A stretch of DNA of 64,000 bases, taken from positions 108,066,001 to 108,130,000 of the forward strand of contig OZ296649.1 of the NCBI GenBank assembly GCA_965655095.1. The letters are read 5' to 3'. Below the pieces are notes generated by a model that worked only from the letters and a program-made list of their open reading frames with translations, had not been told where the DNA came from and did not search any database. Below, one piece after another: positions 40,301-64,000 of this stretch (its first letter is position 1; every line of letters begins with the position of its first letter). The DNA comes from Haplodiscus bocki (Eukaryota). The position numbers and the translations under genes are program-made.

Positions 40301-43300
40301 TCTAAAATTTCTCGAAATCACTTTTCTGTCCACAGAAGCGAATTGAAAAATGTCAAGATGATACTTCCTACAGAAGTTTAAAGTTGTCGATTGAGATCAA
40401 ATTGGTTGAAATCAAGCCTGCAGTTAGAGAGAATGATGATATCGAACACCAAGATGATTCAAAGTTCACATTTGCCCATGGCCTTTGGAACTTTTCGGAT
40501 TTTGATGCAGGGATTAAAAAGATTCGTTTCAGATAAGCATCCGTTTTTATTGATTCAGTTTTTTTGTTTTGGAACATGATCAAGTAAAACAAGCCGGTAT
40601 TTACGGAGAAACAAGGTGAATAAAAGAAATCAGTCAAAATTTGTGATGACTTTTGCATTTTCGGACTAACGGGAGTTCGCTGGAAAGTATCTAGAAAACA
40701 AGTTTTCTCGGATACGCCAAAACAAACTGAAGGCTGTTGATTCAGTCTTTGTTGAACGAATTCAAGACTGTACTTACGAAATAAGAAAATTTTCAGACCA
40801 CATACAAATAACTGTTATTGGCATTTTTGGAAATATATCCTTATCAAGGTTCTTTTTCAACAATTGAAATGAAGAAAAAATCCATCGAATACTATTGCAA
40901 CAGCTTTAACTTTTCAAATCAGACTGTCCCGCTTGGAATTAAAATTGTTGTGGTAAATAAAAAGATCGAACATCAAGAGAAGCCAGTGTTCACAGTCTAT
41001 TTCGACTGCTGAAATTTCCCTGGTTTTGATGCAAAAAATGAGCAAAATGACTTTATTGTTCAACCTCATTCTTTTTTTTTCGTCAAAAAGTAAAAGAAAC
41101 AAACCAACTAGTTGTTTATGGAGAAAAACATTACAAGATCAAGATAAAACAATTTTTATACCAATTTTCATTTTTTCGAACTACTGGTACCTTGGAGGAA
41201 CGCATTTAGACATTCTTTTTTCGAACACCCCAAAACAAATTAAAGATTGTTCATTAAGACTATGCTGAAAGAATTGCAGCCCATATTTGCGAATTGAGAA
41301 GAGTTTGAATAAGGAAACAAATCAATGTTAATACCGCCTTCTGGATAATTTTCACTAACAACATTCTGTCCCAAGATTCAAAATGATGAGAAAATACAAA
41401 TGACCACAACTGGAAAAACGTAACTTTTATAATTGAAGCCATGCGGTTGGAAAATAAACTTGTAGTGGAAAAGAAATGAGATCGAACATCAAGATATTTC
41501 AGTATTCACATTCCTTTCAACTTGTGGAGTTTTTCGGATTTTGACGCAAGCAGCAAAATAAGAAATTGCAAGTCTAATCTCACCCTTTTGTTGTGACTTT
41601 GTTTTCAGATGGACGTTGAATACACAAAAAGACCAGTTAAGTACGGAGAAAAACGTTCGACAATCGACAAAAACCAAACTTTGTGGAGATTTTGGCCTTT
41701 TCGGGCTACCAGGACCTTGCTGTAAGGTATTCAGAAAAGGTTTCTCATGAAAAACCCTCTTTACGTGTTGAATAATACTGATTGAGACTTTGACGGAAGC
41801 GTTGCAGCCTGTTATTACGATGAAGAAAGAGTTTGAATGTGGAGAGAAAAGTGTCTTAGAAGAGCTTTTGAGAACCTTCTTAAAATCAGTTTTCTGTCCA
41901 CAGAAGCAAAATGAAAAAATGTCTGAATGATACTTCCTCCATAGGTTTGAAGTTTCCGTTTGAGATCAAAATGGTTGAAATCAAGTCTGCAGTTAGAGAG
42001 AAGGAGGAGATCGAACACTAAGATGAGTCAAAAATCACATTCTCCTTAGGCCATTGGAACTTTTCGGATTTTGATGCAGGAACCAAAATTTTGATTTGAG
42101 AAACCCATCCATTTTTTTGGTCAATTTTTTTTGATTGGAACCTCGATGGGGTAAAACAAACCGGTTGTTACGCAGAAACACTTGAATAAAAGAAATCAAT
42201 CAAAATTTGAGAAATTTTTTGCATTTTCTGGCTAACGGGACCTTGCTGGAAAGTATTAAAGAAAAGATTTCAATGAAAACCATTTGTACGTGTTAATTGT
42301 TATTGAATGAACCTTTGACGGAAAAATTCCAACCTAACTTTAAAATGATGAAAGAGTTCGAATATGGAGACATATCTATCTTGAAGATCCTTTTTGGAAG
42401 TTTCTGACAATCAATTTTCTGTCCACTGAAGCGAAATGAATTATTTTAGATGATACCTGCTGCAAATGTTAGAAGTCTTCGATTGAAATCAAGTTGGTTG
42501 AAATCCAGGCTGCAGTTAGATAAAAGTTTGAGTTCGAATACCAAGACGAGTCAAATTTAACAGATTTCTTTGACTTCTGAAACTTTTCGGTTTCCGATGC
42601 CAGGACTAAAACTAAAAATTTGAGAGTCGGCTCCACCGCCATTTGAGTATTTGTTCCGAAAGCAACCTCGGTGGAACAACTCAGGCCGGTACTTGAGGAG
42701 AATCACTGGGGATAGAAAAAAGAAGCAAAATTTGTACTGATTTTTGAAGTTTCGGACCACCGGGACCTTGCTGGAAAGTATTCATGAAATTTTTTAATCA
42801 AAACTATTTGTAGGAGTTAAAAATTTTTGATTGGGGCATTGAAGGAAGTTGTTCAGCATTGCAGCTTGTATTTACAATGAAGAAAGATGTTGAATATGGA
42901 GACAAATGTGTCTCAAAAAGTGCTTTTCGAAAAGTTCTCGAAATCACTTTTTGTCCACAGAAGCGAATTGAAAAATGTCAAGATGATACTTCCTACAGAG
43001 GTTTAATGTTTTCGATTGAGATCAAATTGGTTGAAATCAAGCCTGCAGTTAGAGAGAATGATGATATCGATTACCAAGATGAGTCAAAGTTCACATTTGC
43101 CCATGGCCTTTGGAACTTTTCGGATTTTGATGCAGGGGTTAAAAATATTGGTTTCAGAAAACCATCCATATTTATTGATTCAGTTTTTTTGTTTGGGAGC
43201 TTGATCAAGTAAAACAAGCCGGTATTTACGGAGAAACAAGGTGAATAAAAGAAATCAGTCAAAATTTGTGATGACTTTTGCAATTTTGGACTAACGGGAG

Positions 43301-46300
43301 TTCACTGGAAGGTATCTAGACAACAAGTTTTCTCGGATACGCCAAAAGAAACTGAAGGCTGTTGATTCAGTCTTTGTTGAACGAATTCAAGGCTGTACTT
43401 ACGAAGTAAGAAAAACTTCAAACCAGATACAAATAACTGTTATTGGTATTTTTGGAAATATATCCTTATCAAGACTCTTTTTCAAAAATTGAAAAGAAGA
43501 AAAAATCCATCGAATACTATTAAAACAGCCTTAGTTTTGCAAATTAGACTGTCCCGCTTGGAATTAAAATTGTTGTGGTAAAAAAAAGGTCGAACATCAA
43601 GAGAAGTCAGTGCTCACAGTCTATTTCGACTTCTGAATTTTTCCTGATTTTGAAGCAAAAAATGAGCAAAATGAATATATTGTTCAACCACATTCTTTTT
43701 TTTTCGTCAAAAACTAAGAAAAAAACAAACCAACTAGTTGTTTATGGAGCAAAACAATACATGATCAAGATAAAACAATTTTTCTAGCATTTTTCATTTT
43801 TTCGAACTACTGGTACATTGGAGGAACGCATTTAGACATTCTTTTTTCGAACACCCCAAAACAAATTAAAGATTGTTCATTAAAACTATGCTGAAAGAAT
43901 TGCAGCCCATATTTGCGAATTGAGAAGAGTTTGAATAAGGAAACAAATCAATGTTAATACCGCCTTCTGGATAATTTTCACTAACAACATTCTGTCCCAA
44001 GGTTCAAAATGATGAGAAAATACAAATGACCACAACTGGAAAAACGTAACTTTTGTAAATGAAGCCATGCGGTTGGAAAATAAAGTTGTAGTGGAAAAGA
44101 AAAGAGATCGAACATCAAGATATTTCAGTATTCGCATTCCTTTCAACTTGTGGAGTTTTTCGGATTTTGACGCAAGCAACAAAATAAGAAATTGCAAGTC
44201 TAATCTCACCCTTTTGTTGTGACTTTGTTCTCAGATGGACGTTGAACACACAAAAAGACCAGTTAAGTACGGAGAAAGACGTTCGACAATCGACAAAAAC
44301 CAAAATTTGTGGAGATTTTTGCCTTTTCGGGCTACCAGGACCTTGCTGTAATTCATTCAGAAAAGGTTTCTCATGAAAAACCCTCTTTACGTGTTGATTA
44401 ATACTGATTGAGTCTTTGACGGAAGCGTTGCAGCCTGTTATTACGATGAAGAAAGAGTTTGAATGTGGAGAGAAAAATGTCTTAGAAATGGTTTTGAGAA
44501 CCTTCTCGAAATCAGTTTTCTGTCCACAGAAGCGAATTGAAAAATGTCAAGATGATACTTCCTACAGAAGTTTAAAGTTGTCGATTGAGATCAAATTGGT
44601 TGAAATCAAGCCTGCAGTTAGGGAGAATGATGATATCGAACACCAAGATGAGTCAAAGTTCACATTTGCCCATGGCCTTTGGAACTTTTCGGATTTTGAT
44701 GCAGGGATTAAAAATATTCGTTTCAGATAACCATCCATTTTTATTGATTCAGTTTTTTTGTTTGGGAGCTTGATCAAGTAAAACAAGCCGGTATTTACGG
44801 AGAAACAAGGTGAATAAAAGAAATCAGTCAAAATTTGTGATGACTTTTGCAATTTTGGACTAACGGGAGTTTGCTGGAAGGTATCTAGAAAACAAGTTTT
44901 CTCGGATACACCAAAACAAACTGAAGGCTGTTGATTCAGTCTTTGTTGAACGAATTCAAGGCTGTACTTACGAAGTAAGAGAACTTTCAAAACAGATACA
45001 AATCACTGTTATTGGCATTTTTTGGAAATATCTCCTTATCAAGATTCTTTTTCAAAAATTGAAATGAAGAAAAAATCCATCGAATACTTTTGCAACAGCA
45101 TAAACTTTGCAAATCAGACTGTCCTGCTTAGAAATAAAATTGTTGTGGTAAATAAAAAGATCGAACATCAAGAGAAGTCAGTGTTCACAGTCTATTTCGA
45201 CTTCTGAATTTTTCCTGATTTTGATGCAAAAAATGAGCAAAATGAATTTATTGTTGAACCCCATTTTTTATTTTTTTTTCGTCAAAAACTAAGAAAAAAA
45301 CAAACCAACTAGTTGTTTATGGAGCAAAACAATACATGATCAAGATAAAACAATTTTTATAGCATTTTTCATTTTTTCGAACTACTGGTACATTGGAGGA
45401 ACGCATTTAGACATTCTTTTTTCGAACACCCCAAAACAAATTAAAGATTGTTCATTAAGACTATGCTGAAAGAATTGCAGCCCATATTTGCGAAATGAGA
45501 AGAGTTTGAATAAGGAAACAAATCAAGGTTAATACCGCCTTCTGGATAATTTTCACTAACAACATTCTGTCCCAAGGTTCAAAATGATGAGAAAATACAA
45601 ATGACCACAACTGGAAAAACGTAACTTTTGTATTTGAAGCCATGCGGTTGGAAAACAAACTTGTAGTGGAGAAGAAATGAGATCGAACGTCAAGATGTTT
45701 CAGTATTCACATTCCTTTCAACTTGTGGAGTTTTTCGGATTTTGACGCAAGCAGCAAAATAAGAAATTGCAAGTCTAATCTCACCCTTTTGTTGTGACTT
45801 TGTTCTCAGATGGACGTTGCATACACAAAAAGACCAGTTAAGTACGGAGAAAGACGTTCGACAATCGACAAAAACCAAACTTTGTGGAGATTTTGGCCTT
45901 TTCGGGCTACCAGGACCTTGCTGTAAGGTATTCAGAAAAGGTTTCTCATGAAAAACCCTCTTTACGTGTTGAATATTACTGATTGAGTCTTTGACGGAAG
46001 CGTTGCAGCCTGTTATTACGATGAAGAAAGAGTTTGAATGTGGAGAGAAAAGTGTCTTAGAAGAGCTTTTGAGAACCTTCTTGAAATCAGTTTTCTGTCC
46101 ACAGAAGCAAAATGAAAAAATGTCTGAATGATACTTCCTGCATAGGTTTGAAGTTTCCGTTTGAGATCAAAATGGTTGAAGTCAAGTCTGCAGTTAGAGA
46201 GAAGGAGGAGATCGAACACCAAGATGAGTCAAAAATCACATTCTCATTAGGCCATTGGAATTTATCGGATTTTGATGCAGGAACCAAATTTTTTGATTTG

Positions 46301-48600
46301 AGAAACCCATCCATTTTTTTTGGTCGAAATTTTTTGATTGGAACCTCGATGGAGTAAAACAAACCGGTTGTTACGCAGAAACACTTGAATAAAAGAAATC
46401 AATCAAAATTTGTGATATTTTTTGCAATTTCGGGCTAACGGGACCTTGCTGGAAAGTATTCAAGAAAAGTTTTCAATGAAAACCATTTGTACGAGTTAAT
46501 TGTTATTGAATGAACCTTTGATGGAAAAATTCCAACCTAACTTTAGGATGATGAAAGAGTTCGAATATGGAGACATATCTATCTTGAAGATCCTTTTTGG
46601 AAGTTTCTCAAAATCAATTTTCTGTCCACTGAAGCGAAATGAAAAGTTTTAGATGATACCTGCTGCAAATGTTAGAAGTCTTCGATTGAAATCAAGTTGG
46701 TTGAAATCCAGGCTGCAGTTAGATAAAAGTTTGAGTTCGAATACCAAGACGAGTCAAATTTAACAGATTTCTTTGACTTCTGGAACTTTTCGGTTTCCGA
46801 TGCCAGGACTAAAATTAAAAATTTGAGAGTCGGCTCCACCGCCATTTGAGTTTTTGTTCCGAAAGCAACCTCGATGGAACAACTCAGGCCGGTATTTGAA
46901 GGGAATCACTGGGGATAGAAAAAAGAAGCAAAATTTGTAGTGAATTTTGAAGTTTTGGTCTACCGGGACCTTGCTGGAAGGTATTCATGAAATTTTTCAA
47001 TCAAAACTATTTGTAGGAGTTAAAATTTATTGAATGGGGCATTGAAGGAAGATGTTCAGCATTGCAGCCTGTATTTACGATGAAGAAAGATGTTGAATAT
47101 GGAGACAAATGTGTCTTAAAGGTGCTTTTCGAAAATTTCTCGAAATCACTTTTCTGTCCACAGAAGCGAATTGAAAAATGTCAAGATGATACTTCCTACA
47201 GAAGTTTAAAGTTGTCGATTGAGATCAAATTGGTTGAAATTAAGCCTGCAGTTAGAGAAAATGATGATATCGAACACCAAGATGAGTCAAAGTTCACATT
47301 TGCCCATGGCCTTTGGAACTTTTCGGATTTTGATGCAGGGATTAAAAATATTCGTTTCAGATAACCATCCGTTTTTATTGATTCAGTTTTCTTGTTTGGG
47401 AACTTGATCAAGTAAAACAAGCCGGTATTTACGGAGAAACAAGGTGAATAAAAGAAATCAGTCAGAATTTGTGATGACTTCTGCAATTTTGGACTAACAG
47501 GAGTTTGCTGGAAGGTATCTAGAAAACAAGTTTTCTCGGATACGCCAAAACAAACTGAAGGCTGTTGATTCAGTCTTTGTTGAACGAATTCAAGGCTTTG
47601 CTTACGAAGTAAGAGAAATTTCAAAACAGATACAAATCACTGTTATTGGCATTTTTGGAAATATAATCTTATCAAGATTCTTTTTCAATAATTGAAATGA
47701 AGAAAAAATCCATCGAATACTATTGCAACAGCTTTAACTTTGCAAATCCGACTGTCCTGCTTGGAATTAAAATTGTTGTGGTAAATAAAAAGATCGAACA
47801 TGAAGTGAAGTCAGTGTTCACAGTCTATTCCGACTTCTGAGTTTTTTCTGATTTTCATGCAAAAAAATGAGCGAAATGAACTTATTGTTCAACCCCATTC
47901 TTTATTTTTTTTTCGTCAAAAACATAAAAAAAAACAAACCAACTAGGAAAAACATTACATGATCAAGATAAAGTTATTTTTATAGCATTTTTCATTTTCG
48001 AACTACTGGTACATTGGAGGAACGCATTTAGACATTCTTTTTTCGAACACCCCAAAACAAATTAAAGATTCTTCATTAAGACTATGCTGAAAGAATTGCA
48101 GCCCATATTTGCGAATTGAGAAGAGTTTGAATAAGGAAACAAATCAATGTTAATACCGCCTTCTGGATAATTTTCACTAACAACATTCTGTCCCAAGGTT
48201 CAAAATGATGAGAAAATACAAATGACCACAACTGGAAAAACGTAACTTTTGTAATTGAAGCCATGCGGTTGGAAAATAAACTTGTAGTGGAAAAGAAATG
48301 AGATCGAACATCAAGATATTTCAGTATTCACATTCCTTTCATCTTGTGGAGTTTTTCGGATTTTGACGCAAGCAACAAAATAAGAAATTGCAAGTCTAAT
48401 CTCACCCTTTTGTTGTGACTTTGTTTTCAGATGGACGTTGAATACACAAAAAGACCAATTAAGTATGGAGAAAAACGTTCGACAATCGACAAAAACCAAA
48501 CTTTGTGGAGATTTTGGCCTTTTCGGTCTACCAGGACCTTGCCGTAAGGTATTCAGAAAAGGTTTCTCATGAAAAACCCTCTGTACGTGTTGAATAATAC
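34370..48600 (+). repeat. 5-monomer HOR (A-B-C-D-E), ~2625 bp period, with one shortened 3-mer unit
   Basis: D-monomer ORF starts at 36010, 38634, 41260, 43886 (steps 2624-2626), then 45461 (+1575) and 48082 (+2621). Also 34422 to 37048 and 34984 to 37610 (2626). Confidence 0.93.
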
Positions 48601-51600
48601 TGATTGAGTCTTTGACAGAAGCGTTGCAGCCTGTTATTACGATGAAGAAAGAGTTTGAATGTGGAGAGGAAAGTGTCTTAGAAGAGCTTTTGAGAACCTT
48701 GTTAAAATCAGTTTTCTGTCCACAGAAGCAAAATGAAAAAATGTCTGAATGATATTTCCTCCATAGGTTTGAAGTTTCCGTTTGAGATCAAAATGGTTGA
48801 AGTCAAGTCTGCAGTTAGAGCGCAGGAGGAGATCGAATGCCAAGAAGAATCAAAAGTCACATTCTCCTTTGGCCTTTGGAACTTTTCGTATTTTGATGCA
48901 GGAATTAAACTTTTTGATTTGAGAGACCCATCCATTTCTAATGGTCTAAATTTTTTGGTTGGGACCTCGATAGAGTAAAACAAGCCGGTTGTTACGGAGA
49001 AACACGTGAGTAAAAGAAATCGATCAAAAACTGTGATAACTTTTGCAATTTTTGACTAAGGGAACCTTGCTGGAAAGTATATAGACAACAGACTTTCTCG
49101 GATACGCCCAAACGATTTAAAAGCTGTTGATTGAGTCTTTTGTTGAACGAATTCAAGGCTGTACTTACGAAGTAACAAAATTTTCAAAACAGATACAAAT
49201 CACTGTTATTGGCATTTTTGGAAAGATATTCTTATCAAGATTCTTTTTCAAAAATTGAAATGAAGAAAAAATCCATCGAATACTATTGCAACAGCTTTAA
49301 CTTTGCAAATCCGACTGTCCTGCTTGGAATTAAAATTGTTGTGGTAAATAAAAAAAATCGAACATCAAGTGAAGTCAGTGTCCACAGTCTATTTCGACTT
49401 CTGAATTTTTCCTGATTTTCATGCAAAAAATGAGCAAAATGAACTTATTGTTCAACCCCATTCTTTATTTTTTTTCGTCAAAAACATAAAAAAAACAAAC
49501 CAACTAGGAAAAACATTACATGATCAAGATAAAGTAGTTTTTATAACATTTTTCATTTTCGAACTACTGGTACATTGGAGGAACGCATTTAGACATTCTT
49601 TTTTCGAACACCCCAAAACAAATTAAAGATTGTTCATTAAGACTATGCTGAAAGAATTGCAGCCCATATTTGCGAATTGAGAAGAATTTGAATAAGGAAA
49701 CAAATCAATGTTAATACCGCCTTCTGGATAATTTTCACTAACAACATTCTGTCCCGAGGTTCAAAATGATGAGAAAATACAAATGACCACAACTGGAAAA
49801 ACGTAACTTTTGTAATTGAAGCCATGCGGTCGGAAAACAAACTTGTAGTGGAAAAGAAATGAGATCGAACATCAAGATATTTCAGTATTCACATTCCTTT
49901 CAACTTGTGGAGTTTTTCGGATTTTGACGCAAGCAACAAAATAAGTAATTGCAAGTCTAATCTCACCCTTTTGTTGTGACTTTGTTTTCAGATGGACGTT
50001 GAATACACAAAAAGACCAGTTAAGTACGGAGAAAAACGTTCGACAATCGACAAAAACCAAACTTTGTGGAGATTTTGGCCTTTTCGGGCTACCAGGACCT
50101 TGCTGTAAGGTATTCAGAAAAGGTTTCTCATGAAAAACCCTCTTTACGTGTTGATTAATACTGATTGAGTCTTTGACGGAAGCGTTGCAGCCTGTTATTA
50201 CGATGAAGAAAAAGTTTGAATGTAGAGAGAAAAGTGTCTTAGAAGAGCTTTTGAGAACATTCTTAAAATCAGTTTTCCGTCCACAGAATCAAAATGAAAA
50301 AATGTCGAAATGATACTTCCTCCATAGATTTAAACTTTTCGATTGAGATCAAAATGGTTGAAGCCAAATTTGCAGTTAGAGCGCAGGAGGAGATCGAATG
50401 CCAAGAAGAATCAAAAGTCACATTCTCCTTTGGCCTTTGGAACTTTTCGGATTTTGATGCAGGAATTAAAATTTTTGATTTGAGAGACCCATCCATTTCT
50501 AATGGTCTAAATTTTTCGATTGGGACCTCGTTAGTGTAAAACAAGCCGGTTGTTACGGAGAAACACGTGAGTAAAAGAAATCGATCAAAAACTGTGATAA
50601 CTTTTGCAATTTTGGACTAACGGAACCTTGCTGGAAAGTATTTAGACAACAGACTTTCTCGGATACGCCCAAACGATTTAAAAGCTGTTGATTGAGCCTT
50701 TTGTTGAACGAATTCACGGCTGTATTTACCAAGTATGAAAAGTTTCAAAAAAGATACAAATCAATGTTATGGTGCTTTTTTGGAAAAATCTCGCTATCAA
50801 GACCTCTTTTCAAAAATCCAAAGGAAGAAAAAATCCATTGAAAACAATCACAGCAGCATGAATATTGCAAATGAGACCATGCTGTATGAAAATAAACTTG
50901 TTTGGTAAAAACAGATCGAACATCAAAATAAGTCAGTACTCACAGTCTGTTTTGACTTCTGAACTTTTTCTGAATTTGATGCAGAGAATGAACAAAATGA
51001 AATTATTGTGCAATCCCATTCTTTAAATGTTTTTGTTAAAATCTCAAAAAACAAACAATTAGGTATTTACGGAGAAAAACGTTCCATGACCAAGATGAAA
51101 CAATTTTTATAGCATTTGTTTGTAAATTCGAACTACTGGGACCTTGGAGGAACGCATTTAGACAATTTTTTTCAATTTTTTTCGAACACTCCAAAACGAG
51201 TTAAAGGTTGTTGTTTGAGACTTTGAGGGATAGATTGCAGCCGGTATTTGCGAAGTGAGAACAGTTTGAATCAGGAGACAAATCAAAGTTAATACTGCTT
51301 GTTGGAAAATTCCCATTAACAGCGTTTTGGCTCAAGATTCGAAAAGATGAGAAAAACCAATTGACTCCAACTGGAAAATTTTAACCTATGTAATTGAGGC
51401 CATGCAGTTTGAAATTAAAGTTGTAGTGGAAACAAACGAGATCGAACATCAAGATATTTCAGAATTGACAATCTTTTTAATTTATGGAATTTTTCGGACT
51501 TTGTCACAAGCAACCAAATGAATAAATTGCAAGTCCAATCTCACCCGTTTCTTGTGATTTTGTTTTCTGATGGACGTTGCAGAAACAAAAAAAAACAGTT

Positions 51601-54600
51601 AGTTAAAGAGAATGACGTTCGATGATCAAGAGAAATCACAATTTGTAGAGATTTTTGACTTTTCGGGCTACAAGGACCTTGCTGTAAGGTATTCAGAAAA
51701 AGTTCCTCATAAAAAACCCTTTTCACGTGTTGAAGAGTATTGATTGAGTCTTTGACGGAAGCGTTCGAGCCTCTAACTACGATGAAGAAAGGGTTTGAAT
51801 GTGGAGACAAAACTGTTTTAGAAGTGCTTTTGAAAGCTTTCGGAAAGTCAGTTTTCTGTCCACAGAAGCAAAATGACAAAACGTCTAATTGATACTTCCT
51901 CCATGGGTTTAGAGTTTTCGATTGAGATCAAATTGGTTGAAGTCAAGTCTGCAGTTAGAGAGAAGGTGGAGATCGAACACCAAGATGAGTCAAAAATCAC
52001 ATTTGCCCATGGCCATTGGAACTTTTCGGATTTTGATGCAGGGATAAAAATTAATGGTTTGAGAAACCCATCCAATTTTATCGGTTCAATTTTTTTGATT
52101 GGGATCTTGAAGAAGTAAAACAAGCCGGTTGTTGTGGAGAAACAAATTGAATAAAAAAATCAATCAAATTTTGTGATGACTTTTGCAATTTTGGGCTAAC
52201 GGGAGTTTGCTGGAAGATATCTAGACAACAAGTTTTCTCGGATGCGCCCAAACAAACTGAAGGCTGTTGATTCAGTCTTTGTTGAACGAATTCAAGGCTG
52301 TACTTACGAAGTAACAAAATTTTCAAAACAGATACAAATCACTGTTATTGGCATTTTTGGAAATATATTCTTATCAAGATTCTTTTTCAAAAATTGAAAT
52401 GAAGAAAAAATCCATCGAATACTATTGCAACAGCTTTAGTTTTGCAAATCCGACTGTCCTGCTTGGAATTAAAATTGTTGTGGTAAATAAAAAAAATCGA
52501 ACATCAAGTGAAGTCAGTGTCCACAGTCTATTTCGACTTCTGAATTTTTCCTGGTTTTGATGCAAAAAATGAGCAAAATGAATTTATTGTTCAACCTCAT
52601 TCTTTTTTTTTCGTCAAAAAGTAAAAGAAACAAACCAACTAGTTGTTTATGGAGAAAAACATTACATGATCAAGATAAAACAATTTTTATAGCATTTTTC
52701 AATTTTTCGAACTACTGGTACATTGGAGGAACGCATTTAGACATTCTTTTTTCGAACACCCCAAAACAAATTAAAGATTGTTCATTAAGACTATGTTGAA
52801 AGAATTGCAGCCCATATTTGCGAATTGAGAAGAGTTTGAATAAGGAAACAAATCAATGTTAATACCGCCTTCTGGATAATTTTCACTAACAACATTCTGT
52901 CCCAAGGTTCAAAATGATGAGAAAATACAAATGACCACAACTGTAAAAACGTAACTTTTGTAATTGAAGCCATGCGGTTGGAAAACAAACTTGTAGTGGA
53001 AAAGAAATGAGATCGAACATCAAGATATTTCAGTATTCACATTCCTTTCAACTTGTGGAGTTTTTCGGATTTTGACGCAAGCAACAAAATAAGAAATTGC
53101 AAGTCTAATCTCACCCTTTTGTTGTGACTTTGTTTTCAGATGGACGTTGAATACACAAAAAGACCAGTTAAGTACAGAGAAAAACGTTCGACGATCGACA
53201 AAAACCAAACTTTGGGGAGATTTTGGCCTTTTGGGGCTACCAGGACCTTGCTGTAAGGTTTTCAGAAAAAGTTTCTCATGAAAATCCCTCTTTACGTGTT
53301 GAATAATACTGATTGAGATTTTGACGGAAGCGTTGCAGCCGGTTATTACGATGAAGAAAGAGTTTGAATGTGGAGAGAAAAGTGTCTTAGAAGAGCTTTT
53401 GAGAACCTTCTTTAAATCAGTTTTCTGTCCACAGAATCAAAATGAAAAAATGTCGAAATGATACTTCCTCCATAGGTTTGAAGTTTCCGTTTGAGATCAA
53501 AATGGTTGAAGTCAAGTTTTCAGTTAGAGAGAAGGAGGAGATCGAACACCAAGATGAGTCAAAAATCACATTTGCCCATGGCCATTGGAACTTTTCGGAT
53601 TTTGATGCAGGGATAAAAATTAATGGTTTGAGAAACCCATCCAATTTTATCGGTTCAATTTTTTTGATTGGGATCTTGAAGAAGTAAAACAAGCCGGTTG
53701 TTATGGAGAAACAAATTGAATAAAAAAATCAATCAAATTTTGTGATGACTTTTGCAATTTTGGGCTAACGGGAGTTTGCTGGAAGATATCTAGACAACAA
53801 GTTTTCTCGGATGCGCCAAAACAAACTGAAGGCTGTTGATTCAGTCTTTGTTGAACGAATTCAAGGCTGTACTTACGAAGTAACAAAATTTTCAAAACAG
53901 ATACAAATCACTGTTATTGGAATTTTTGGAATTATATTCTTATCAAGATTCTTTTTCAAAAATTGAAATGAAGAAAAAATCCATCGAATACTATTGCAAC
54001 AGCTTTAGTTTTGCAAATCCGACTGTCCTGCTTGGAATTAAAATTGTTGTGGTAAATAAAAAAAATCGAACATCAAGTGAAGTCAGTGTCCACAGTCTAT
54101 TTCGACTTCTGAATTTTTCCTGGTTTTGATGCAAAAAATGAGCAAAATGAATTTATTGTTCAACCCCATTCTTTATTTTGTTTCGTCAAAAAGTAAAAAA
54201 ACAAACCAACTAGTTGTTTATGGAGAAAAACATTACATGATCAAGATAAAACAATTTTTATAGCATTTTTCAATTTTTCGAACTACTGGTACATTGGAGG
54301 AACTCATTTAGACATTCTTTTTTCGAACACCCCAAAACAAATTAAAGATTGTTCATTAAGACTATGCTGAAAGAATTGCAGCCCATATTTGCGAATTGAG
54401 AAGAGTTTGAATAAGGAAACAAATCAATGTTAATACCGCCTTCTGGATAATTTTCACTAACAACATTCTGTCCCAAGGTTCAAAATGATGAGAAAATACA
54501 AATGACCACAACTGGAAAAACGTAACTTTTGTAATTGAAGCCATGCGGTTGGAAAACAAACTTGTAGTGGAAAAGAAATGAGATCGAACATCAAGATATT

Positions 54601-55875
54601 TCAGTATTCACATTCCTTTCAACTTGTGGAGTTTTTCGGATTTTGACGCAAGCAACAAAATAAGAAATTGCAAGTCTAATCTCACCCTTTTGTTGTGACT
54701 TTGTTTTCAGATGGACGTTGAATACACAAAAAGACCAGTTAAGTACGGAGAAAAACGTTCGACAATCGACAAAAACCAAACTTTGTGGAGATTTTGGCCT
54801 TTTCGGGCTACCAGGACCTTGCTGTAAGGTATTCGAAAAACGTTTCTCATGAAAAACCCTCTTTACGTGTTGAATAATACTGATTGAGTCTTTGACGGAA
54901 GCGTTGCGGCCTGTTATTACGATGAAGAAAGAGATTGAATGTGGAGAGAAAAGTGTTTTAGAAGAGCTTTTGAGAACATTCTTAAAATCAGTTTTCTGTC
55001 CACAGAATCAAAATGAAAAAATGTCGAAATGATACTTCCTCCATAGATTTAAACTTTTCGATTGAGATCAAAATGGTTGAAGCCAAATTTGCAGTTAGAG
55101 CGCAGGAGGAGATCGAATGCCAAGAAGAATCAAAAGTCACATTCTCCTTTGGCCTTTGGAACTTTTCGGATTTTGATGCAGGAATTAAAATTTTTGATTT
55201 GAGAGACCCATCCATTTCTAATGGTCTAAATTTTTCGATTGGGACCTCGTTAGTGTAAAACAAGCCGGTTGTTACGGAGAAACACGTGAGTAAAAGAAAT
55301 CGATCAAAAACTGTGATAACTTTTGCAATTTTGGACTAACGGAACCTTGCTGGAAAGTATTTAGACAACAGACTTTCTCGGATACGCCCAAACGATTTAA
55401 AAGCTGTTGATTGAATCTTTTGTTGAACGAATTCACGGCTGTATTTACCAAGTATGAAAAGTTTCAAAAAAGATACAAATCAATGTTATGGGGCTTTTTT
55501 GGAAAAATCTCGCTATCAAAACCTCTTTTCAAAAATCCAAAGGAAGAAAAAGTCCATTGAAAACAATCACAGCAGCATGAATATTGCAAATGAGATCATG
55601 CTGTATGAAAATAAACTTGTTTGGTAAAAACAGATCGAACATCAAAATAAGTCAGTACTCACAGTCTGTTTTGACTTTTGAATTTTTATGATTTTGATGC
55701 AGAGAATGAACAAAATGAAATTATTGTCAAATCCCATTCTTTAAATGTTTTTGTTAAAATCTCAAGAAAACAACCAAATAGGTATTTACGGAGAAAAACG
55801 TTCCATCACCAAGTTAAAACAATTTTTGTAGCGTTTGTTTTGTAAATTTGAGCTACTGGGACCTTGGAGGAACGC
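48600..55875 (+). repeat. Mosaic zone of interleaved E-C-D and F-G-H trimers (~1570 bp)
   Basis: D-type ORFs at 49643, 52791 and 54362 alternate with G/H monomers (GAATTCACGGCTGTATTTACCAAG at ~50710 and ~55429; GAGACTTTGAGGGATAG at ~51217 and ~55927). A and B monomers are absent. Confidence 0.88.
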
Positions 55876-58800
55876 ATTTAGACAATTTTTTTCGAACACT
55901 CCAAAACGAGTTGAAGGTTGTTGTTTGAGACTTTGAGGGATAGATTGCAGCCGGTATTTGCGAAGTGAGAACAGTTTGAATCAGGAGACAAATCAAAGTT
56001 AATACTGCTTGTTGGAAAAATCCCATTAACAGCGTTTTGGCTCAAGATTCGAAAAGATGAGAAAAACCAATTGACTCCAACTGGAAAGTTTTAACCTATG
56101 TAATTGAGGCCATGCGGTTTAAAATTAAACTTGTTGTGAAAAAAACGAGATCGAACATCAAGATATTTCAGAATTGACAATCTTTTTAATTTGTGGAAGT
56201 TTTCGGACTTTGGCACAAGCAACAAAATGATAAAATTGCAAGTCCAATCTCACCCGTTTCTTGTGATTTTGTTTTCAGATGGACGCTGCAGAAACAAAAA
56301 AACCAGTTAGTTAAAGAGACTGACGTTCGATGATCGAGATCAGTCAAAATTTTTGGAAATTTTTGCCTTTTCGGGCTACAAGAACATTGGTGTAAAGTAT
56401 GCAGAAAAAGTTCCTCATAAATAACCCTTTTTACGTGTTGAATAGTATTGATTGTGTCTTTGACGGAAGCGTTGCAGCCTGTAATTACGATGAAGAAAGA
56501 GTTTGAATGTGGAGACAAAACTGTTTTAGATGTCTTTCTGAAACCTTCTAAAAATCAGTTTTCTGTCCACAGAAGCAAAATGAAAAAATGTCGAAATGAT
56601 ACTTCCTCCATAGATTTAAACTTTTCGATTGAGATCAAAATGGTTGAAGCCAAGTCTGCAGTTGGAGAGAAGGAGGTGATCGAACGCCAAGAAGAGTCAA
56701 AAATCACATTCTCCTTTGGCCTTTGGAACTTTTTGGATTTTGATGCTGGAAGTAAAAATTTTGATTTGAGAAACCCATCCATTTCTATTGGTCTAATTTG
56801 TTGGATTGGGACCTCGATAGAGTAAAACAAGCCGGTGGTTACGGAGAAACACGTGAGTAAAAGAAATTGATCAAAAATTGTGATAACTTTTGCAATTTTG
56901 GACTAACAGAACCTTGCTGGAAAAGTATTTAGACAACAGACTTTCTCGGATACGCACAAACGATTTAAAAGCTGTTGATTGAGTCTTTTGTTGAACGAAT
57001 TCACGGCTGTATTTACCAAGTAAGAAAAGTTTCAAAAAAGATACAAATCAATGTTATGGGTCTTTTTTGGAAAAATCTCGCTATCAAGACCTCTTTTCAA
57101 AAATCCAAAGGAAGGAAAAATCCATTGAAAACAATCACAGAAGCATGAATATTGCAAGTGAGACCATGCTGTTTGAAAATAAACTTGTTTGGTAAAAACA
57201 GATCGAACATCAAAATAAGTCAGTACTCACAGTCTATTTTGACTCCTGAATTTTTTCTGATTTTGTTGCAGAGAATGAACAAAATGAAAGTTTTGTCCGA
57301 TCCCATTCTATAAATGTTTTTGTTAAAATCTCAAGAAAACAACCAACTAGGTATTTACGGAGAAAAACGTTCCATCACCAAGTTAAAATCAATTTTTGTA
57401 GCGTTTGTTTTGTAAATTCGAACTATTGGGACCTTGGAGGAAGGCATTTAGACAATTTTTTTCGAACACTCCAAAACGAGTTGAAGGTTGTTGTTTGAGA
57501 CTTTGAGGGATAGATTGCAGCCGGTATTTGCGAAGTGAGAACAGTTTGAATCAGGAGACAAATCAAAGTTAATACTGCTTGTTGGAAAAATCCCATTAAC
57601 AGCGTTTTGGCTCAAGATTCGAAAAGATGAGAAAAACCAATTGACTCCAACTGGAAAGTTTTAACCTATGTAATTGAGGCCATGCGGTTTAAAATTAAAC
57701 TTGTTGTGAAAAAAACGAGATCGAACATCAAGATATTTCAGAATTGACAATCTTTTTAATTTGTGGAAGTTTTCGGACTTTGGCACAAGCAACAAAATGA
57801 TAAAATTGCAAGTCCAATCTCACCCGTTTCTTGTGATTTTGTTTTCAGATGGACGCTGCAGAAACAAAAAAACCAGTTAGTTAAAGAGACTGACGTTCGA
57901 TGATCGAGATCAGTCAAAATTTTTGGAAATTTTTGCCTTTTCGGGCTACAAGAACATTGGTGTAAAGTATGCAGAAAAAGTTCCTCATAAATAACCCTTT
58001 TTACGTGTTGAATAGTATTGATTGTGTCTTTGACGGAAGCGTTGCAGCCTGTAATTACGATGAAGAAAGAGTTTGAATGTGGAGACAAAACTGTTTTAGA
58101 TGTCTTTCTGAAACCTTCTAAAAATCAGTTTTCTGTCCACAGAAGCAAAATGAAAAAATGTCGAAATGATACTTCCTCCATAGATTTAAACTTTTCGATT
58201 GAGATCAAAATGGTTGAAGCCAAGTCTGCAGTTGGAGAGAAGGAGGTGATCGAACGCCAAGAAGAGTCAAAAATCACATTCTCCTTTGGCCTTTGGAACT
58301 TTTTGGATTTTGATGCTGGAAGTAAAAATTTTGATTTGAGAAACCCATCCATTTCTATTGGTCTAATTTGTTGGATTGGGACCTCGATAGAGTAAAACAA
58401 GCCGGTGGTTACGGAGAAACACGTGAGTAAAAGAAATTGATCAAAAATTGTGATAACTTTTGCAATTTTGGACTAACAGAACCTTGCTGGAAAAGTATTT
58501 AGACAACAGACTTTCTCGGATACGCACAAACGATTTAAAAGCTGTTGATTGAGTCTTTTGTTGAACGAATTCACGGCTGTATTTACCAAGTAAGAAAAGT
58601 TTCAAAAAAGATACAAATCAATGTTATGGGTCTTTTTTGGAAAAATCTCGCTATCAAGACCTCTTTTCAAAAATCCAAAGGAAGGAAAAATCCATTGAAA
58701 ACAATCACAGAAGCATGAATATTGCAAGTGAGACCATGCTGTTTGAAAATAAACTTGTTTGGTAAAAACAGATCGAACATCAAAATAAGTCAGTACTCAC

Positions 58801-61800
58801 AGTCTATTTTGACTCCTGAATTTTTTCTGATTTTGTTGCAGAGAATGAACAAAATGAAAGTTTTGTCCGATCCCATTCTATAAATGTTTTTGTTAAAATC
58901 TCAAGAAAACAACCAACTAGGTATTTACGGAGAAAAACGTTCCATCACCAAGTTAAAATCAATTTTTGTAGCGTTTGTTTTGTAAATTCGAACTATTGGG
59001 ACCTTGGAGGAAGGCATTTAGACAATTTTTTTCGAACACTCCAAAACGAGTTGAAGGTTGTTGTTTGAGACTTTGAGGGATAGATTGCAGCCGGTATTTG
59101 CGAAGTGAGAACAGTTTGAATCAGGAGACAAATCAAAGTTAATACTGCTTGTTGGAAAAATCCCATTAACAGCGTTTTGGCTCAAGATTCGAAAAGATGA
59201 GAAAAACCAATTGACTCCAACTGGAAAGTTTTAACCTATGTAATTGAGGCCATGCGGTTTAAAATTAAACTTGTTGTGAAAAAAACGAGATCGAACATCA
59301 AGATATTTCAGAATTGACAATCTTTTTAATTTGTGGAAGTTTTCGGACTTTGGCACAAGCAACAAAATGATAAAATTGCAAGTCCAATCTCACCCGTTTC
59401 TTGTGATTTTGTTTTCAGATGGACGCTGCAGAAACAAAAAAACCAGTTAGTTAAAGAGACTGACGTTCGATGATCGAGATCAGTCAAAATTTTTGGAAAT
59501 TTTTGCCTTTTCGGGCTACAAGAACATTGGTGTAAAGTATGCAGAAAAAGTTCCTCATAAATAACCCTTTTTACGTGTTGAATAGTATTGATTGTGTCTT
59601 TGACGGAAGCGTTGCAGCCTGTAATTACGATGAAGAAAGAGTTTGAATGTGGAGACAAAACTGTTTTAGATGTCTTTCTGAAACCTTCTAAAAATCAGTT
59701 TTCTGTCCACAGAAGCAAAATGAAAAAATGTCGAAATGATACTTCCTCCATAGATTTAAACTTTTCGATTGAGATCAAAATGGTTGAAGCCAAGTCTGCA
59801 GTTGGAGAGAAGGAGGTGATCGAACGCCAAGAAGAGTCAAAAATCACATTCTCCTTTGGCCTTTGGAACTTTTTGGATTTTGATGCTGGAAGTAAAAATT
59901 TTGATTTGAGAAACCCATCCATTTCTATTGGTCTAATTTGTTGGATTGGGACCTCGATAGAGTAAAACAAGCCGGTGGTTACGGAGAAACACGTGAGTAA
60001 AAGAAATTGATCAAAAATTGTGATAACTTTTGCAATTTTGGACTAACAGAACCTTGCTGGAAAAGTATTTAGACAACAGACTTTCTCGGATACGCACAAA
60101 CGATTTAAAAGCTGTTGATTGAGTCTTTTGTTGAACGAATTCACGGCTGTATTTACCAAGTAAGAAAAGTTTCAAAAAAGATACAAATCAATGTTATGGG
60201 TCTTTTTTGGAAAAATCTCGCTATCAAGACCTCTTTTCAAAAATCCAAAGGAAGGAAAAATCCATTGAAAACAATCACAGAAGCATGAATATTGCAAGTG
60301 AGACCATGCTGTTTGAAAATAAACTTGTTTGGTAAAAACAGATCGAACATCAAAATAAGTCAGTACTCACAGTCTATTTTGACTCCTGAATTTTTTCTGA
60401 TTTTGTTGCAGAGAATGAACAAAATGAAAGTTTTGTCCGATCCCATTCTATAAATGTTTTTGTTAAAATCTCAAGAAAACAACCAACTAGGTATTTACGG
60501 AGAAAAACGTTCCATCACCAAGTTAAAATCAATTTTTGTAGCGTTTGTTTTGTAAATTCGAACTATTGGGACCTTGGAGGAAGGCATTTAGACAATTTTT
60601 TTCGAACACTCCAAAACGAGTTGAAGGTTGTTGTTTGAGACTTTGAGGGATAGATTGCAGCCGGTATTTGCGAAGTGAGAACAGTTTGAATCAGGAGACA
60701 AATCAAAGTTAATACTGCTTGTTGGAAAAATCCCATTAACAGCGTTTTGGCTCAAGATTCGAAAAGATGAGAAAAACCAATTGACTCCAACTGGAAAGTT
60801 TTAACCTATGTAATTGAGGCCATGCGGTTTAAAATTAAACTTGTTGTGAAAAAAACGAGATCGAACATCAAGATATTTCAGAATTGACAATCTTTTTAAT
60901 TTGTGGAAGTTTTCGGACTTTGGCACAAGCAACAAAATGATAAAATTGCAAGTCCAATCTCACCCGTTTCTTGTGATTTTGTTTTCAGATGGACGCTGCA
61001 GAAACAAAAAAACCAGTTAGTTAAAGAGACTGACGTTCGATGATCGAGATCAGTCAAAATTTTTGGAAATTTTTGCCTTTTCGGGCTACAAGAACATTGG
61101 TGTAAAGTATGCAGAAAAAGTTCCTCATAAATAACCCTTTTTACGTGTTGAATAGTATTGATTGTGTCTTTGACGGAAGCGTTGCAGCCTGTAATTACGA
61201 TGAAGAAAGAGTTTGAATGTGGAGACAAAACTGTTTTAGATGTCTTTCTGAAACCTTCTAAAAATCAGTTTTCTGTCCACAGAAGCAAAATGAAAAAATG
61301 TCGAAATGGTACTTCCTCCATAGATTTAAACTTTTCGATTGAGATCAAAATGGTTGAAGCCAAGTCTGCAGTTGGAGAGAAGGAGGTGATCGAACGCCAA
61401 GAAGAGTCAAAAATCACATTCTCCTTTGGCCTTTGGAACTTTTTGGATTTTGATGCTGGAAGTAAAAATTTTGATTTGAGAAACCCATCCATTTCTATTG
61501 GTCTAATTTGTTGGATTGGGACCTCGATAGAGTAAAACAAGCCGGTGGTTACGGAGAAACACGTGAGTAAAAGAAATTGATCAAAAATTGTGATAACTTT
61601 TGCAATTTTGGACTAACAGAACCTTGCTGGAAAAGTATTTAGACAACAGACTTTCTCGGATACGCACAAACGATTTAAAAGCTGTTGATTGAGTCTTTTG
61701 TTGAACGAATTCACGGCTGTATTTACCAAGTAAGAAAAGTTTCAAAAAAGATACAAATCAATGTTATGGGTCTTTTTTGGAAAAATCTCGCTATCAAGAC

Positions 61801-64000
61801 CTCTTTTCAAAAATCCAAAGGAAGGAAAAATCCATTGAAAACAATCACAGAAGCATGAATATTGCAAGTGAGACCATGCTGTTTGAAAATAAACTTGTTT
61901 GGTAAAAACAGATCGAACATCAAAATAAGTCAGTACTCACAGTCTATTTTGACTCCTGAATTTTTTCTGATTTTGTTGCAGAGAATGAACAAAATGAAAG
62001 TTTTGTCCGATCCCATTCTATAAATGTTTTTGTTAAAATCTCAAGAAAACAACCAACTAGGTATTTACGGAGAAAAACGTTCCATCACCAAGTTAAAATC
62101 AATTTTTGTAGCGTTTGTTTTGTAAATTCGAACTATTGGGACCTTGGAGGAAGGCATTTAGACAATTTTTTTCGAACACTCCAAAACGAGTTGAAGGTTG
62201 TTGTTTGAGACTTTGAGGGATAGATTGCAGCCGGTATTTGCGAAGTGAGAACAGTTTGAATCAGGAGACAAATCAAAGTTAATACTGCTTGTTGGAAAAA
62301 TCCCATTAACAGCGTTTTGGCTCAAGATTCGAAAAGATGAGAAAAACCAATTGACTCCAACTGGAAAGTTTTAACCTATGTAATTGAGGCCATGCGGTTT
62401 AAAATTAAACTTGTTGTGAAAAAAACGAGATCGAACATCAAGATATTTCAGAATTGACAATCTTTTTAATTTGTGGAAGTTTTCGGACTTTGGCACAAGC
62501 AACAAAATGATAAAATTGCAAGTCCAATCTCACCCGTTTCTTGTGATTTTGTTTTCAGATGGACGCTGCAGAAACATAAAAACCAGTTAGTTAAAGAGAC
62601 TGACGTTCGATGATCGAGATCAGTCAAAATTTTTGGAAATTTTTGCCTTTTCGGGCTACAAGAACATTGGTGTAAAGTATGCAGAAAAAGTTCCTCATAA
62701 ATAACCCTTTTTACGTGTTGAATAGTATTGATTGTGTCTTTGACGGAAGCGTTGCAGCCTGTAATTACGATGAAGAAAGAGTTTGAATGTGGAGACAAAA
62801 CTGTTTTAGATGTCTTTCTGAAACCTTCTAAAAATCAGTTTTCTGTCCACAGAAGCAAAATGAAAAAATGTCGAAATGATACTTCCTCCATAGATTTAAA
62901 CTTTTCGATTGAGATCAAAATGGTTGAAGCCAAGTCTGCAGTTGGAGAGAAGGAGGTGATCGAACGCCAAGAAGAGTCAAAAATCACATTCTCCTTTGGC
63001 CTTTGGAACTTTTTGGATTTTGATGCTGGAAGTAAAAATTTTGATTTGAGAAACCCATCCATTTCTATTGGTCTAATTTGTTGGATTGGGACCTCGATAG
63101 AGTAAAACAAGCCGGTGGTTACGGAGAAACACGTGAGTAAAAGAAATTGATCAAAAATTGTGATAACTTTTGCAATTTTGGACTAACAGAACCTTGCTGG
63201 AAAAGTATTTAGACAACAGACTTTCTCGGATACGCACAAACGATTTAAAAGCTGTTGATTGAGTCTTTTGTTGAACGAATTCACGGCTGTATTTACCAAG
63301 TAAGAAAAGTTTCAAAAAAGATACAAATCAATGTTATGGGTCTTTTTTGGAAAAATCTCGCTATCAAGACCTCTTTTCAAAAATCCAAAGGAAGGAAAAA
63401 TCCATTGAAAACAATCACAGAAGCATGAATATTGCAAGTGAGACCATGCTGTTTGAAAATAAACTTGTTTGGTAAAAACAGATCGAACATCAAAATAAGT
63501 CAGTACTCACAGTCTATTTTGACTCCTGAATTTTTTCTGATTTTGTTGCAGAGAATGAACAAAATGAAAGTTTTGTCCGATCCCATTCTATAAATGTTTT
63601 TGTTAAAATCTCAAGAAAACAACCAACTAGGTATTTACGGAGAAAAACGTTCCATCACCAAGTTAAAATCAATTTTTGTAGCGTTTGTTTTGTAAATTCG
63701 AACTATTGGGACCTTGGAGGAAGGCATTTAGACAATTTTTTTCGAACACTCCAAAACGAGTTGAAGGTTGTTGTTTGAGATTTTGAGGGATAGATTGCAG
63801 CCGGTATTTGCGAAGTGAGAACAGTTTGAATCAGGAGACAAATCAAAGTTAATACTGCTTGTTGGAAAAATCCCATTAACAGCGTTTTGGCTCAAGATTC
63901 GAAAAGATGAGAAAAACCAATTGACTCCAACTGGAAAGTTTTAACCTATGTAATTGAGGCCATGCGGTTTAAAATTAAACTTGTTGTGAAAAAAACGAGA
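55875..64000 (+). repeat. Near-perfect 3-monomer HOR, exact 1570 bp period, more than 5 copies, running off the window
   Basis: ORFs at 56186, 57756, 59326, 60896 and 62466 step by exactly 1570. The only differences seen by eye are at 61309 (A>G), 62577 (A>T) and 63781 (C>T). Confidence 0.98.

What the first reader, a model, noticed from the sequence alone, without database searches (positions are those of the whole stretch)
56450..56980. The ~525 bp monomer is a cryptic trimer of a nucleosome-sized ~175 bp unit
Seen: three homologous heads occur within each monomer. In one example they are GATTGTGTCTTTGACGGAAGCGTTGCAGCCTGTAATTACGATGAAG (56450), GATTGAGATCAAAATGGTTGAAGCCAAGTCTGCAGTTGGAGAGAAG (56627) and GATTGGGACCTCGATAGAGTAAAACAAGCCGGTGGTTACGGAGAAA (56804), with the next monomer at 56977 (spacings 177, 177, 173). 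Each head is followed by a related G..TyGAA..GA.AA.TCA..TTTT.G.AA.TT motif, and the pattern holds across the window. Known: primate alpha satellite (171 bp) and Arabidopsis CEN178 have this mono-nucleosome length. Inference: an ancient ~175 bp satellite was fixed as a trimer.
Basis: partly seen in the sequence, partly recalled or inferred. Interest (0 to 1): 0.8.

Follow-up and report, generated by a model that had tools for sequence, protein, structure and literature searches.

The report
525-bp satellite built from three 175-bp units
The 525-bp repeat that fills this whole window really is three very old, strongly diverged copies of a ~175-bp piece, a layered build well known from satellite DNA such as human centromere repeats, and nothing here shows that it acts as a centromere.

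Summary
The kind of thing is ordinary.

- **Array.** The 64-kb window is one non-coding tandem satellite of ~525-bp monomers, with median pairwise identity 59%.
- **Thirds.** Each monomer has three units of median 177, 175 and 174 bp. Consensus thirds are 59-65% identical (z 15-19 against 1000 dinucleotide shuffles). Autocorrelation peaks at ~175 and ~350 bp appear in all five parts of the window.
- **Order of events.** In a tree of 105 thirds, each slot is one clade (support 98-99). Slots lie about twice as far apart as the deepest 525-bp monomers. So the trimer was fixed before the monomers diversified.
- **Later layers.** These are an old 3-mer, a 4.75-kb unit with an inversion, a 5-mer (2.6 kb) and a young 1570-bp 3-mer whose last copies are 99.9-100% identical.
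- **A fossil level.** The two irregular monomers checked are not in 175-bp register.
- **Negative results.** No RNA family, tRNA or real ORF, no canonical CENP-B box, no excess dyad symmetry.
- **Untested.** The nucleosome link rests on length alone, and a centromere role is untested.
- **Seen before.** The scan already found cryptic higher-order repeats of ~167-180-bp units on other pieces of this genome. I could not test homology to them.

The parts
1..64000 (.). One continuous tandem satellite array of ~525-bp monomers; 372 units of ~175 bp in cyclic order 1-2-3
   Evidence: nhmmer with one monomer tiles the whole window. Self-BLAST offsets are multiples of ~525. Slot HMM annotation gives the unit order.
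56450..56626 (+).
   Evidence: the slot 1 clade has support 98.
56627..56803 (+). Unit T2 (177 bp) of the same monomer
   Evidence: the slot 2 clade has support 99.
56804..56976 (+). Unit T3 (173 bp) of the same monomer
   Evidence: the slot 3 clade has support 98.
56450..58019 (+). One copy of the youngest higher-order repeat: 1570 bp = three 525-bp monomers = nine 175-bp units
   Evidence: The lag-1570 autocorrelation peak is the strongest. Successive copies from 56450 to 61160 are 99.9-100% identical.
48602..64000 (+). Domain of the 1570-bp 3-mer higher-order repeat (monomer types G-F-H)
   Evidence: Monomer type map; copy identities 80-100%.
34434..48601 (+). Domain of mainly 5-mer higher-order repeats (~2625 bp), with some 3-mers interspersed
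   Evidence: Lag-2625 peak; type map GFFFH; copies 91-96% identical.
17357..33393 (.). Domain of a ~4.75-kb unit that includes inverted monomers (minus-strand segments 19085-19976, 25360-26492, 30111-31249)
   Evidence: Minus-strand nhmmer hits; slot string ...acbacba...; lag-4753 peak.
1..10042 (+). Old 3-mer higher-order repeat (types A-B-C); copies only 68-73% identical
   Evidence: Type map; identities.
56454..56469 (+). Head copy of the 16-nt box GRGACYTTGMTGGAAG (3 mismatches in this copy)
56908..56923 (+). Copy of the same box inside T3 (3 mismatches in this copy), ~70 bp before the next monomer's head box

Best explanation
This is non-coding satellite DNA built in layers by repeated rounds of tandem amplification.

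**Step 1.** A ~175-bp unit existed in at least three tandem copies, which diverged from one another.

**Step 2.** A block of three such units (~525 bp) became the new unit of amplification and spread. Every 525-bp monomer in the window therefore carries the same T1-T2-T3 order.

**Step 3.** The 525-bp monomers diverged to ~59% identity and split into two deep groups.

**Step 4.** Blocks of 3, 5 and about 9 monomers were amplified again as higher-order repeats. The latest is a 1570-bp block whose last copies are still identical.

**What is shown and what is inferred.** The hierarchy and the order of events are shown. The process is inferred from general knowledge of satellite evolution: unequal crossing-over or gene conversion between misaligned copies, or segmental amplification.

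**Present state.** The 175-bp level is now a fossil. Homogenisation acts on 525 bp and its multiples.

**Likely chromatin state.** Heterochromatic repeat DNA, possibly pericentromeric. This is inferred, not shown.
For: - **One array.** Tandem ~525-bp monomers tile all 64 kb.
- **The 175-bp sub-period is statistically solid.** Autocorrelation; consensus thirds 59-65% identical, z 15-19; individual thirds of different slots score -14 on average against -32 +/- 6.7 for shuffles, and same-slot pairs score +30; cross-slot HMM hits.
- **Order of events.** The three slots are three clades with support 98-99. Between-slot distance is about twice the within-slot distance.
- **Later layers.** Monomer type map; two deep monomer clades; higher-order copy identities run from 68-73% through 91-96% to 100%.
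- **Non-coding.** No Rfam family at E <= 1, no tRNA, and only chance ORFs of up to 163 aa that start with TTG.
- **Real and abundant.** Contigs from two samples hold it at word depths of hundreds to thousands.
- **A known kind.** Composite units and higher-order repeats are described in other animals, for example the dimeric higher-order repeat TCsat38 of Tribolium (PMC10218199).
Against: - Nothing contradicts the structural reading.
- **Weak points.** Similarity among thirds within any single monomer is weak (z 2.3-4.6), so the case rests on consensus and profile evidence from one array.
- The two samples come from one study, and one of them may be the source of the assembly.
- The mechanism of amplification is inferred.
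- No functional data exist for this locus, and no listed holder is on record as an RNA run.
Confidence: 0.9

Rival explanations
1. The array is a functional centromere satellite. The 175-bp unit reflects one nucleosome plus linker, and the conserved 16-nt box is a protein-binding site, so that CenH3 nucleosomes are phased on the sub-units.
For: - Unit lengths of 177, 175 and 174 bp fall in the 100-200-bp range in which centromeric satellites are enriched (preprint 10.64898/2026.09.17.752431).
- The layered higher-order layout has a very young core at one side.
- Scan notes place findings more than 20 Mb away on either side on the same piece, so the array is not near a chromosome end (not checked by me).
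- The two most conserved 16-column stretches of the monomer lie at homologous places of T2 and T3 and carry the box.
Against: - No chromatin, CenH3, methylation or cytology data.
- No canonical CENP-B box.
- No excess dyad symmetry (DNA fold z +1.07).
- No clean 10-bp WW periodicity.
- The genome holds many different satellite arrays of similar build, so any single one is not likely to be the centromere.
- Homogenisation now ignores the 175-bp register.
Confidence: 0.25
2. The 175-bp units began as the internal tandem sub-repeats of a mobile element (for example an LTR retrotransposon, Helitron or MITE) and expanded into a satellite from there. They were not an old free-standing satellite.
For: - Satellites born from tandem sub-repeats of LTR retrotransposons are documented in Lathyrus sativus (cited in PMC10218199).
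- Scan notes report arrays in this genome made from tRNA genes and from Polinton pieces (unchecked).
Against: - No ORF, RNA family or tRNA signal in the window.
- No element ends or flanking unique DNA within 64 kb.
- No transposon library was available, so this was not really testable.
- It would change only the origin of step 1, not the trimer reading.
Confidence: 0.1
3. The similarity among thirds is chance, a by-product of A/T-rich composition, or convergence on a short shared motif. It is not common descent.
For: - The sequence is 35% GC with many A runs.
- In a single monomer one of the three pairs reaches only z 2.3.
- A shared 16-nt box exists.
Against: - Dinucleotide-preserving shuffles never reach the observed consensus scores (0 of 1000, z 15-19), and the similarity runs along the whole ~175 bp.
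- 72 of 178 columns agree in all three slots.
- The ~175 and ~350 peaks recur in every region.
Confidence: 0.02

Closest known systems
Primate alpha satellite with higher-order repeats, including the ~340-bp dimeric form of Old World monkeys (own knowledge)
   Same: - A nucleosome-length basic unit (171 bp there, ~175 bp here).
- Strongly diverged units in fixed order inside a larger unit that is itself homogenised.
- Several layers of different age side by side.
   Different: - No sequence homology was tested.
- No CENP-B box.
- The basic units here are far more diverged (~58% between slot consensuses), and the 175-bp level is no longer the unit of exchange.
- There are two further levels (525 bp, then 1.57-4.75 kb).
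- Centromere association is unknown.
Mouse major satellite: a 234-bp unit made of four diverged ~58-60-bp sub-repeats (own knowledge)
   Same: What is scored as the 'monomer' is a fixed multimer of older, diverged sub-repeats that show only on internal comparison.
   Different: The sub-repeat there is much shorter than a nucleosome, whereas here it is nucleosome-length. The multiplicity is 4 there and 3 here.
Tribolium castaneum TCsat38 dimeric higher-order repeat (PMC10218199)
   Same: An invertebrate satellite in which sub-unit groups are more alike within a group than between groups (19.4% divergence between, 8.7-10.5% within).
   Different: That one is much younger and shallower. Here the slots differ by ~40%, and further higher-order layers sit on top.
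Cryptic higher-order repeats of ~167-180-bp units on other pieces of this same genome (scan notes s1-381257, s1-381258, s1-359302, s1-354061, s1-354055)
   Same: Same genome, same unit length class, and the same hidden old unit beneath a kilobase-scale repeat.
   Different: Those are 8- to 17-unit blocks, whereas here a 3-unit block became a monomer that then formed its own higher-order repeats. I could not fetch those sequences, so homology to them is untested.

Membership tests
Composite satellite monomer (a fixed multimer of older sub-repeats) | Internal sub-repeats of equal length with similarity above composition-matched controls | tested here: met
   Unit lengths are 177, 175 and 174 bp. 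Consensus thirds are 59-65% identical, z 15-19. Profile autocorrelation z is 5.6.
Composite satellite monomer (a fixed multimer of older sub-repeats) | The same sub-repeat order in all copies, with sub-repeats grouping by position and not by monomer | tested here: met
   The cyclic 1-2-3 order holds over 372 units with few exceptions. The three slot clades have support 98-99.
Satellite DNA with higher-order repeat organisation (alpha-satellite-type layout) | Head-to-tail array in which diverged monomers in fixed order form a larger unit whose copies are much more alike than the monomers | tested here: met
   Monomers are ~55-64% identical between types. Copies of the 1570-bp unit reach 100% and copies of the 2625-bp unit reach 91-96%.
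Satellite DNA with higher-order repeat organisation (alpha-satellite-type layout) | Sequence homology to alpha satellite or to CEN178 | not tested
Homology is not expected across these lineages.
Centromeric satellite | Association with CenH3/CENP-A chromatin, or a position at the primary constriction | not testable with these tools
   No ChIP, methylation or cytology data. The only location hint comes from scan-note offsets.
Centromeric satellite | CENP-B box TTCGNNNNANNCGGG (a feature of many mammalian centromeric satellites, not universal) | tested here: not met
   0 matches. A look-alike with a spacer one base shorter occurs 13 times.
Nucleosome-phased satellite | Unit length of one nucleosome plus linker (about 150-200 bp) | tested here: met
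   Median unit lengths are 177, 175 and 174 bp.
Nucleosome-phased satellite | ~10-bp periodicity of A/T dinucleotides, or measured MNase phasing | tested here: inconclusive
   WW autocorrelation has irregular maxima near lags 7-11, 16, 22-24, 29-30 and 36-38, with no clean 10-bp series. No MNase data.
Tandem array derived from an RNA gene (tRNA, 5S or other) | Recognisable RNA gene or its remnant in the unit | tested here: not met
   No Rfam match at E <= 1 in 54800-58100. No tRNA in 64 kb.

The most novel reading that the evidence does not exclude
The ~175-bp fossil unit is the common ancestor of several chromosome-specific satellites of this genome, namely the ~167-180-bp cryptic units that the scan found on other pieces. 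That would be a counterpart of the alpha-satellite suprachromosomal families in a non-vertebrate, reportedly an acoel worm, and these arrays would mark its centromeres. The conserved 16-nt box GRGACYTTGMTGGAAG would then be the binding site of a centromere or heterochromatin protein.
Probability: 0.1. Interest if true: 0.6.

Novelty: new member of a known kind. Interest (0 to 1): 0.3.

Why it matters
It shows that a repeat scored as a long 'monomer' can hide a nucleosome-length unit, so surveys of satellite monomer length can misfile such families as supra-nucleosomal.

In this genome it adds one more case to a run of ~167-180-bp cryptic units. If these prove homologous, or if the arrays bind CenH3, the animal would offer a second, independent system for studying how layered centromere repeats arise. 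I found no paper describing satellites of acoels in the held library.

On its own, the finding is a clean example of a textbook process.

Tried and rejected
- **TRF.** With its 500-bp period limit it misses the 525-bp repeat entirely, so I used autocorrelation and nhmmer instead.
- **Iterated nhmmer model.** It lost the poorly conserved last ~40 columns. I replaced it by cutting monomers at anchors and aligning them with MAFFT.
- **RNA-gene origin.** Rejected.
- **Coding potential.** Rejected.
- **Dyad symmetry or non-B DNA.** Rejected for the cited monomer.
- **Canonical CENP-B box.** Absent.
- **Sub-period inside the 175-bp unit.** The lag 74-76 peak is not a half-unit repeat: the 175-bp profile shows no significant internal periodicity (z 2.1 against a largest shuffle value of 4.96). 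It comes from two copies of one 16-nt box.
- **175 bp as a present-day unit of exchange.** Two slot-order deviations looked like whole-unit loss and gain. On inspection they are a ~150-bp deletion and a ~195-bp duplication, out of register.
- **Metagenome scans.** Two scans with conserved 22-23-mers found nothing.
- **Scan-notes search by sequence.** Blank.
- **Literature.** Searches for acoel or coral satellites found no description of this repeat.
- **Organism.** Not identified by me. Gene-based scan notes say acoel and transposon-based ones say coral.

Full report
**What is there.** The whole 64-kb window is one tandem array.
- Composition is flat: GC 0.34-0.37, with purine excess on the + strand except in three short stretches.
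- A single monomer (56450-56976) used as an nhmmer query tiles the window with 134 hits. All are on the + strand except three inverted segments.
- Self-BLAST offsets pile up at multiples of ~525 bp.
- TRF, limited to periods up to 500, does not see the repeat.
- I cut 105 clean monomers (modal length 527 bp). Their median pairwise identity is only 59%.

**Check of the observation.** Five independent kinds of evidence support the ~175-bp sub-period.
- Base-by-base autocorrelation of the raw window peaks at lags 173-177, 349-354 and 524-529, and at 1570 and its multiples. The ~175 and ~350 peaks appear in each of five sub-regions.
- A weighted profile of the 105 aligned monomers (528 columns) has circular autocorrelation z 5.6 at lag 177/178. 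The largest value in 200 column shuffles is 3.97.
- The consensus was built from the monomer alignment and then cut in three, so there is no circularity. Its thirds are 59%, 65% and 61% identical in pairwise global alignment, with z 14.7, 19.3 and 14.8, and no dinucleotide shuffle out of 1000 does as well.
- For individual units from 35 non-redundant monomers, different-slot pairs score -14 on average, shuffled pairs -32 +/- 6.7, and same-slot pairs about +30.
- HMMs built for one slot hit units of another slot 62 times at E < 1e-3.

In the cited monomer alone the signal is weaker (z 2.3, 4.1 and 4.6).

**Order of events.**
- A maximum-likelihood tree of the 105 units from the 35 representative monomers puts T1, T2 and T3 in three separate clades. 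Support is SH-aLRT 98, 99 and 98, with the minimum possible two label changes.
- Mean patristic distance is 0.65-0.69 substitutions per site within a slot and 1.21-1.35 between slots. Each slot clade has a stem of ~0.2.
- So the three units had already diverged, and the three-unit block was fixed, before any of the 525-bp monomers now in the window separated.
- The slot order 1-2-3 holds across 372 annotated units.
- In a joint alignment the three slot consensuses are about equally far apart (58% each), and 72 of 178 columns agree in all three.
- I therefore cannot tell a block picked from a long, already diverged 175-bp satellite from a local triplication.

**Later layers.**
- The monomers form about nine types in two deep clades, (C,E,F,I) against (A,B,D,G,H), with support 100.
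- **0-10 kb:** an old A-B-C 3-mer whose copies are 68-73% identical.
- **About 17-33 kb:** a ~4.75-kb unit that includes inverted monomers. The scan had noted this on this window (s1-359513, s1-359443), and my slot map agrees.
- **34-48.6 kb:** a 5-mer of ~2625 bp, 91-96% identical.
- **48.6-64 kb:** a 1570-bp 3-mer whose last copies are 99.9-100% identical.
- The array is thus graded from old on the left to very young on the right.

**The 175-bp level is a fossil.** Two deviations in slot order looked like the loss and the gain of a whole unit. Aligned to the consensus, they are a ~150-bp deletion inside T3 (4358-4735) and a ~195-bp duplication (15.1-15.8 kb). Neither is in 175-bp register. 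Present-day homogenisation works on 525 bp and its multiples.

**What it is not.**
- No Rfam family at E <= 1 in 54800-58100.
- No tRNA in the window.
- Only chance ORFs of up to 163 aa with TTG starts.
- No excess self-folding as single-stranded DNA (z +1.07).
- No canonical CENP-B box.

**A detail inside the unit.**
- A 16-nt box, GRGACYTTGMTGGAAG, occurs 196 times at up to 3 mismatches, against 2.9 expected.
- It sits at two fixed places per monomer: the T1 head and inside T3, ~70 bp before the next head. Each place is hit in about 73 of the 105 cut monomers.
- Weaker copies lie at the T3 head and at the homologous inner place of T2.
- The two most conserved 16-column stretches of the monomer alignment are the homologous inner places of T2 and T3.
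- This box pair explains the minor autocorrelation peak at lags 74-76. The 175-bp profile has no significant internal period.
- The box is a candidate binding site, but that is speculation.

**Reality and abundance.** Four runs from one study and two samples hold 88-98% of the sampled words of the 1570-bp unit. Their contigs lie on the stretch with no differences, at word depths of hundreds to thousands. One sample may be the source of the assembly, so this is limited independent support. No listed holder is on record as an RNA run.

**Organism and context.**
- The window holds no genes, so I could not identify the organism.
- Scan notes based on host genes call it an acoel worm. Notes based on transposon proteins call it a coral. 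I did not check either.
- The notes also place findings more than 20 Mb to either side on the same piece, so the array is chromosome-internal.
- The scan has already reported cryptic higher-order repeats of ~167-180-bp units on other pieces of this genome. I could not fetch those sequences, so whether they share ancestry with this unit is open.
- Two metagenome scans with conserved 22-23-mers found nothing.

**Comparison with what is known.**
- Units made of older sub-repeats, and higher-order repeats stacked on them, are classical features of satellite DNA. Examples from my own knowledge are alpha satellite with its dimeric forms and the mouse major satellite with four ~58-60-bp sub-repeats.
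- A dimeric higher-order repeat in Tribolium is described in PMC10218199.
- A recent survey reports centromeric satellites enriched at 100-200 bp, alongside 103 families of 201 bp to 5 kb (preprint 10.64898/2026.09.17.752431). The present case shows how a family in the long class can hide a short unit.

**Function.** Membership in the layout classes is met. Membership in the class of centromeric satellites cannot be tested here, and the one sequence feature I could test, the CENP-B box, is not met. My best reading of function is heterochromatic repeat DNA. I put a centromere role at roughly one in four, and it needs CenH3 mapping, MNase-seq and FISH.

**Verdict.** It is a new member of a known kind, of modest interest.

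Noticed in passing
window, e.g. 56454-56469 and 56908-56923; all copies listed: A 16-nt box, GRGACYTTGMTGGAAG, is kept at two fixed places per 525-bp monomer: the T1 head and inside T3, ~70 bp apart across the monomer boundary. It is kept even among monomers that are only ~59% identical. The homologous inner places of T2 and T3 are the most conserved 16-column stretches of the monomer. It is a candidate binding site.
   Followed up: partly
window 3225-3238, 34876-34889, 37502-37515 and 10 more: A CENP-B-box look-alike, TTCGNNNNANCGGG, with a spacer one base shorter than the canonical box, occurs 13 times against 0.11 expected. It lies just 5' of the inner T3 box. The canonical box has no match.
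   Followed up: partly
window 1-64000: There is an age gradient along the array. Higher-order copies are 68-73% identical at the left end, 91-96% in the middle (5-mer), and 99.9-100% for the last 1570-bp copies at the right end. The youngest domain runs off the window.
   Followed up: partly
window 19085-19976, 25360-26492, 30111-31249: Inverted monomer blocks recur at a ~4.75-kb period. At each left junction a + strand slot 1 unit meets a - strand slot 1 unit at nearly the same unit position. This agrees with the scan's earlier notes on this window.
   Followed up: partly
window 32873-33339: A local ~249-bp tandem duplication inside the array (TRF, 1.9 copies, 74% matches). It corresponds to monomer columns ~255-488 being doubled and is not in 175-bp register.
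   Followed up: no
window 4358-4735 and 15098-15800: A short monomer lacks ~150 bp of T3, and a long one has ~195 bp doubled. Both are out of 175-bp register.
   Followed up: yes
window, whole array: The 525-bp monomers split into two deep clades, (C,E,F,I) and (A,B,D,G,H), with support 100. The young higher-order repeats mix members of both. This may mean a further old level between 525 bp and the present higher-order repeats.
   Followed up: partly
window, whole array: The array has steady strand asymmetry, with G>C and A>T on the + strand. GC skew drops to about zero in the 2-kb bins that hold the inverted blocks.
   Followed up: no
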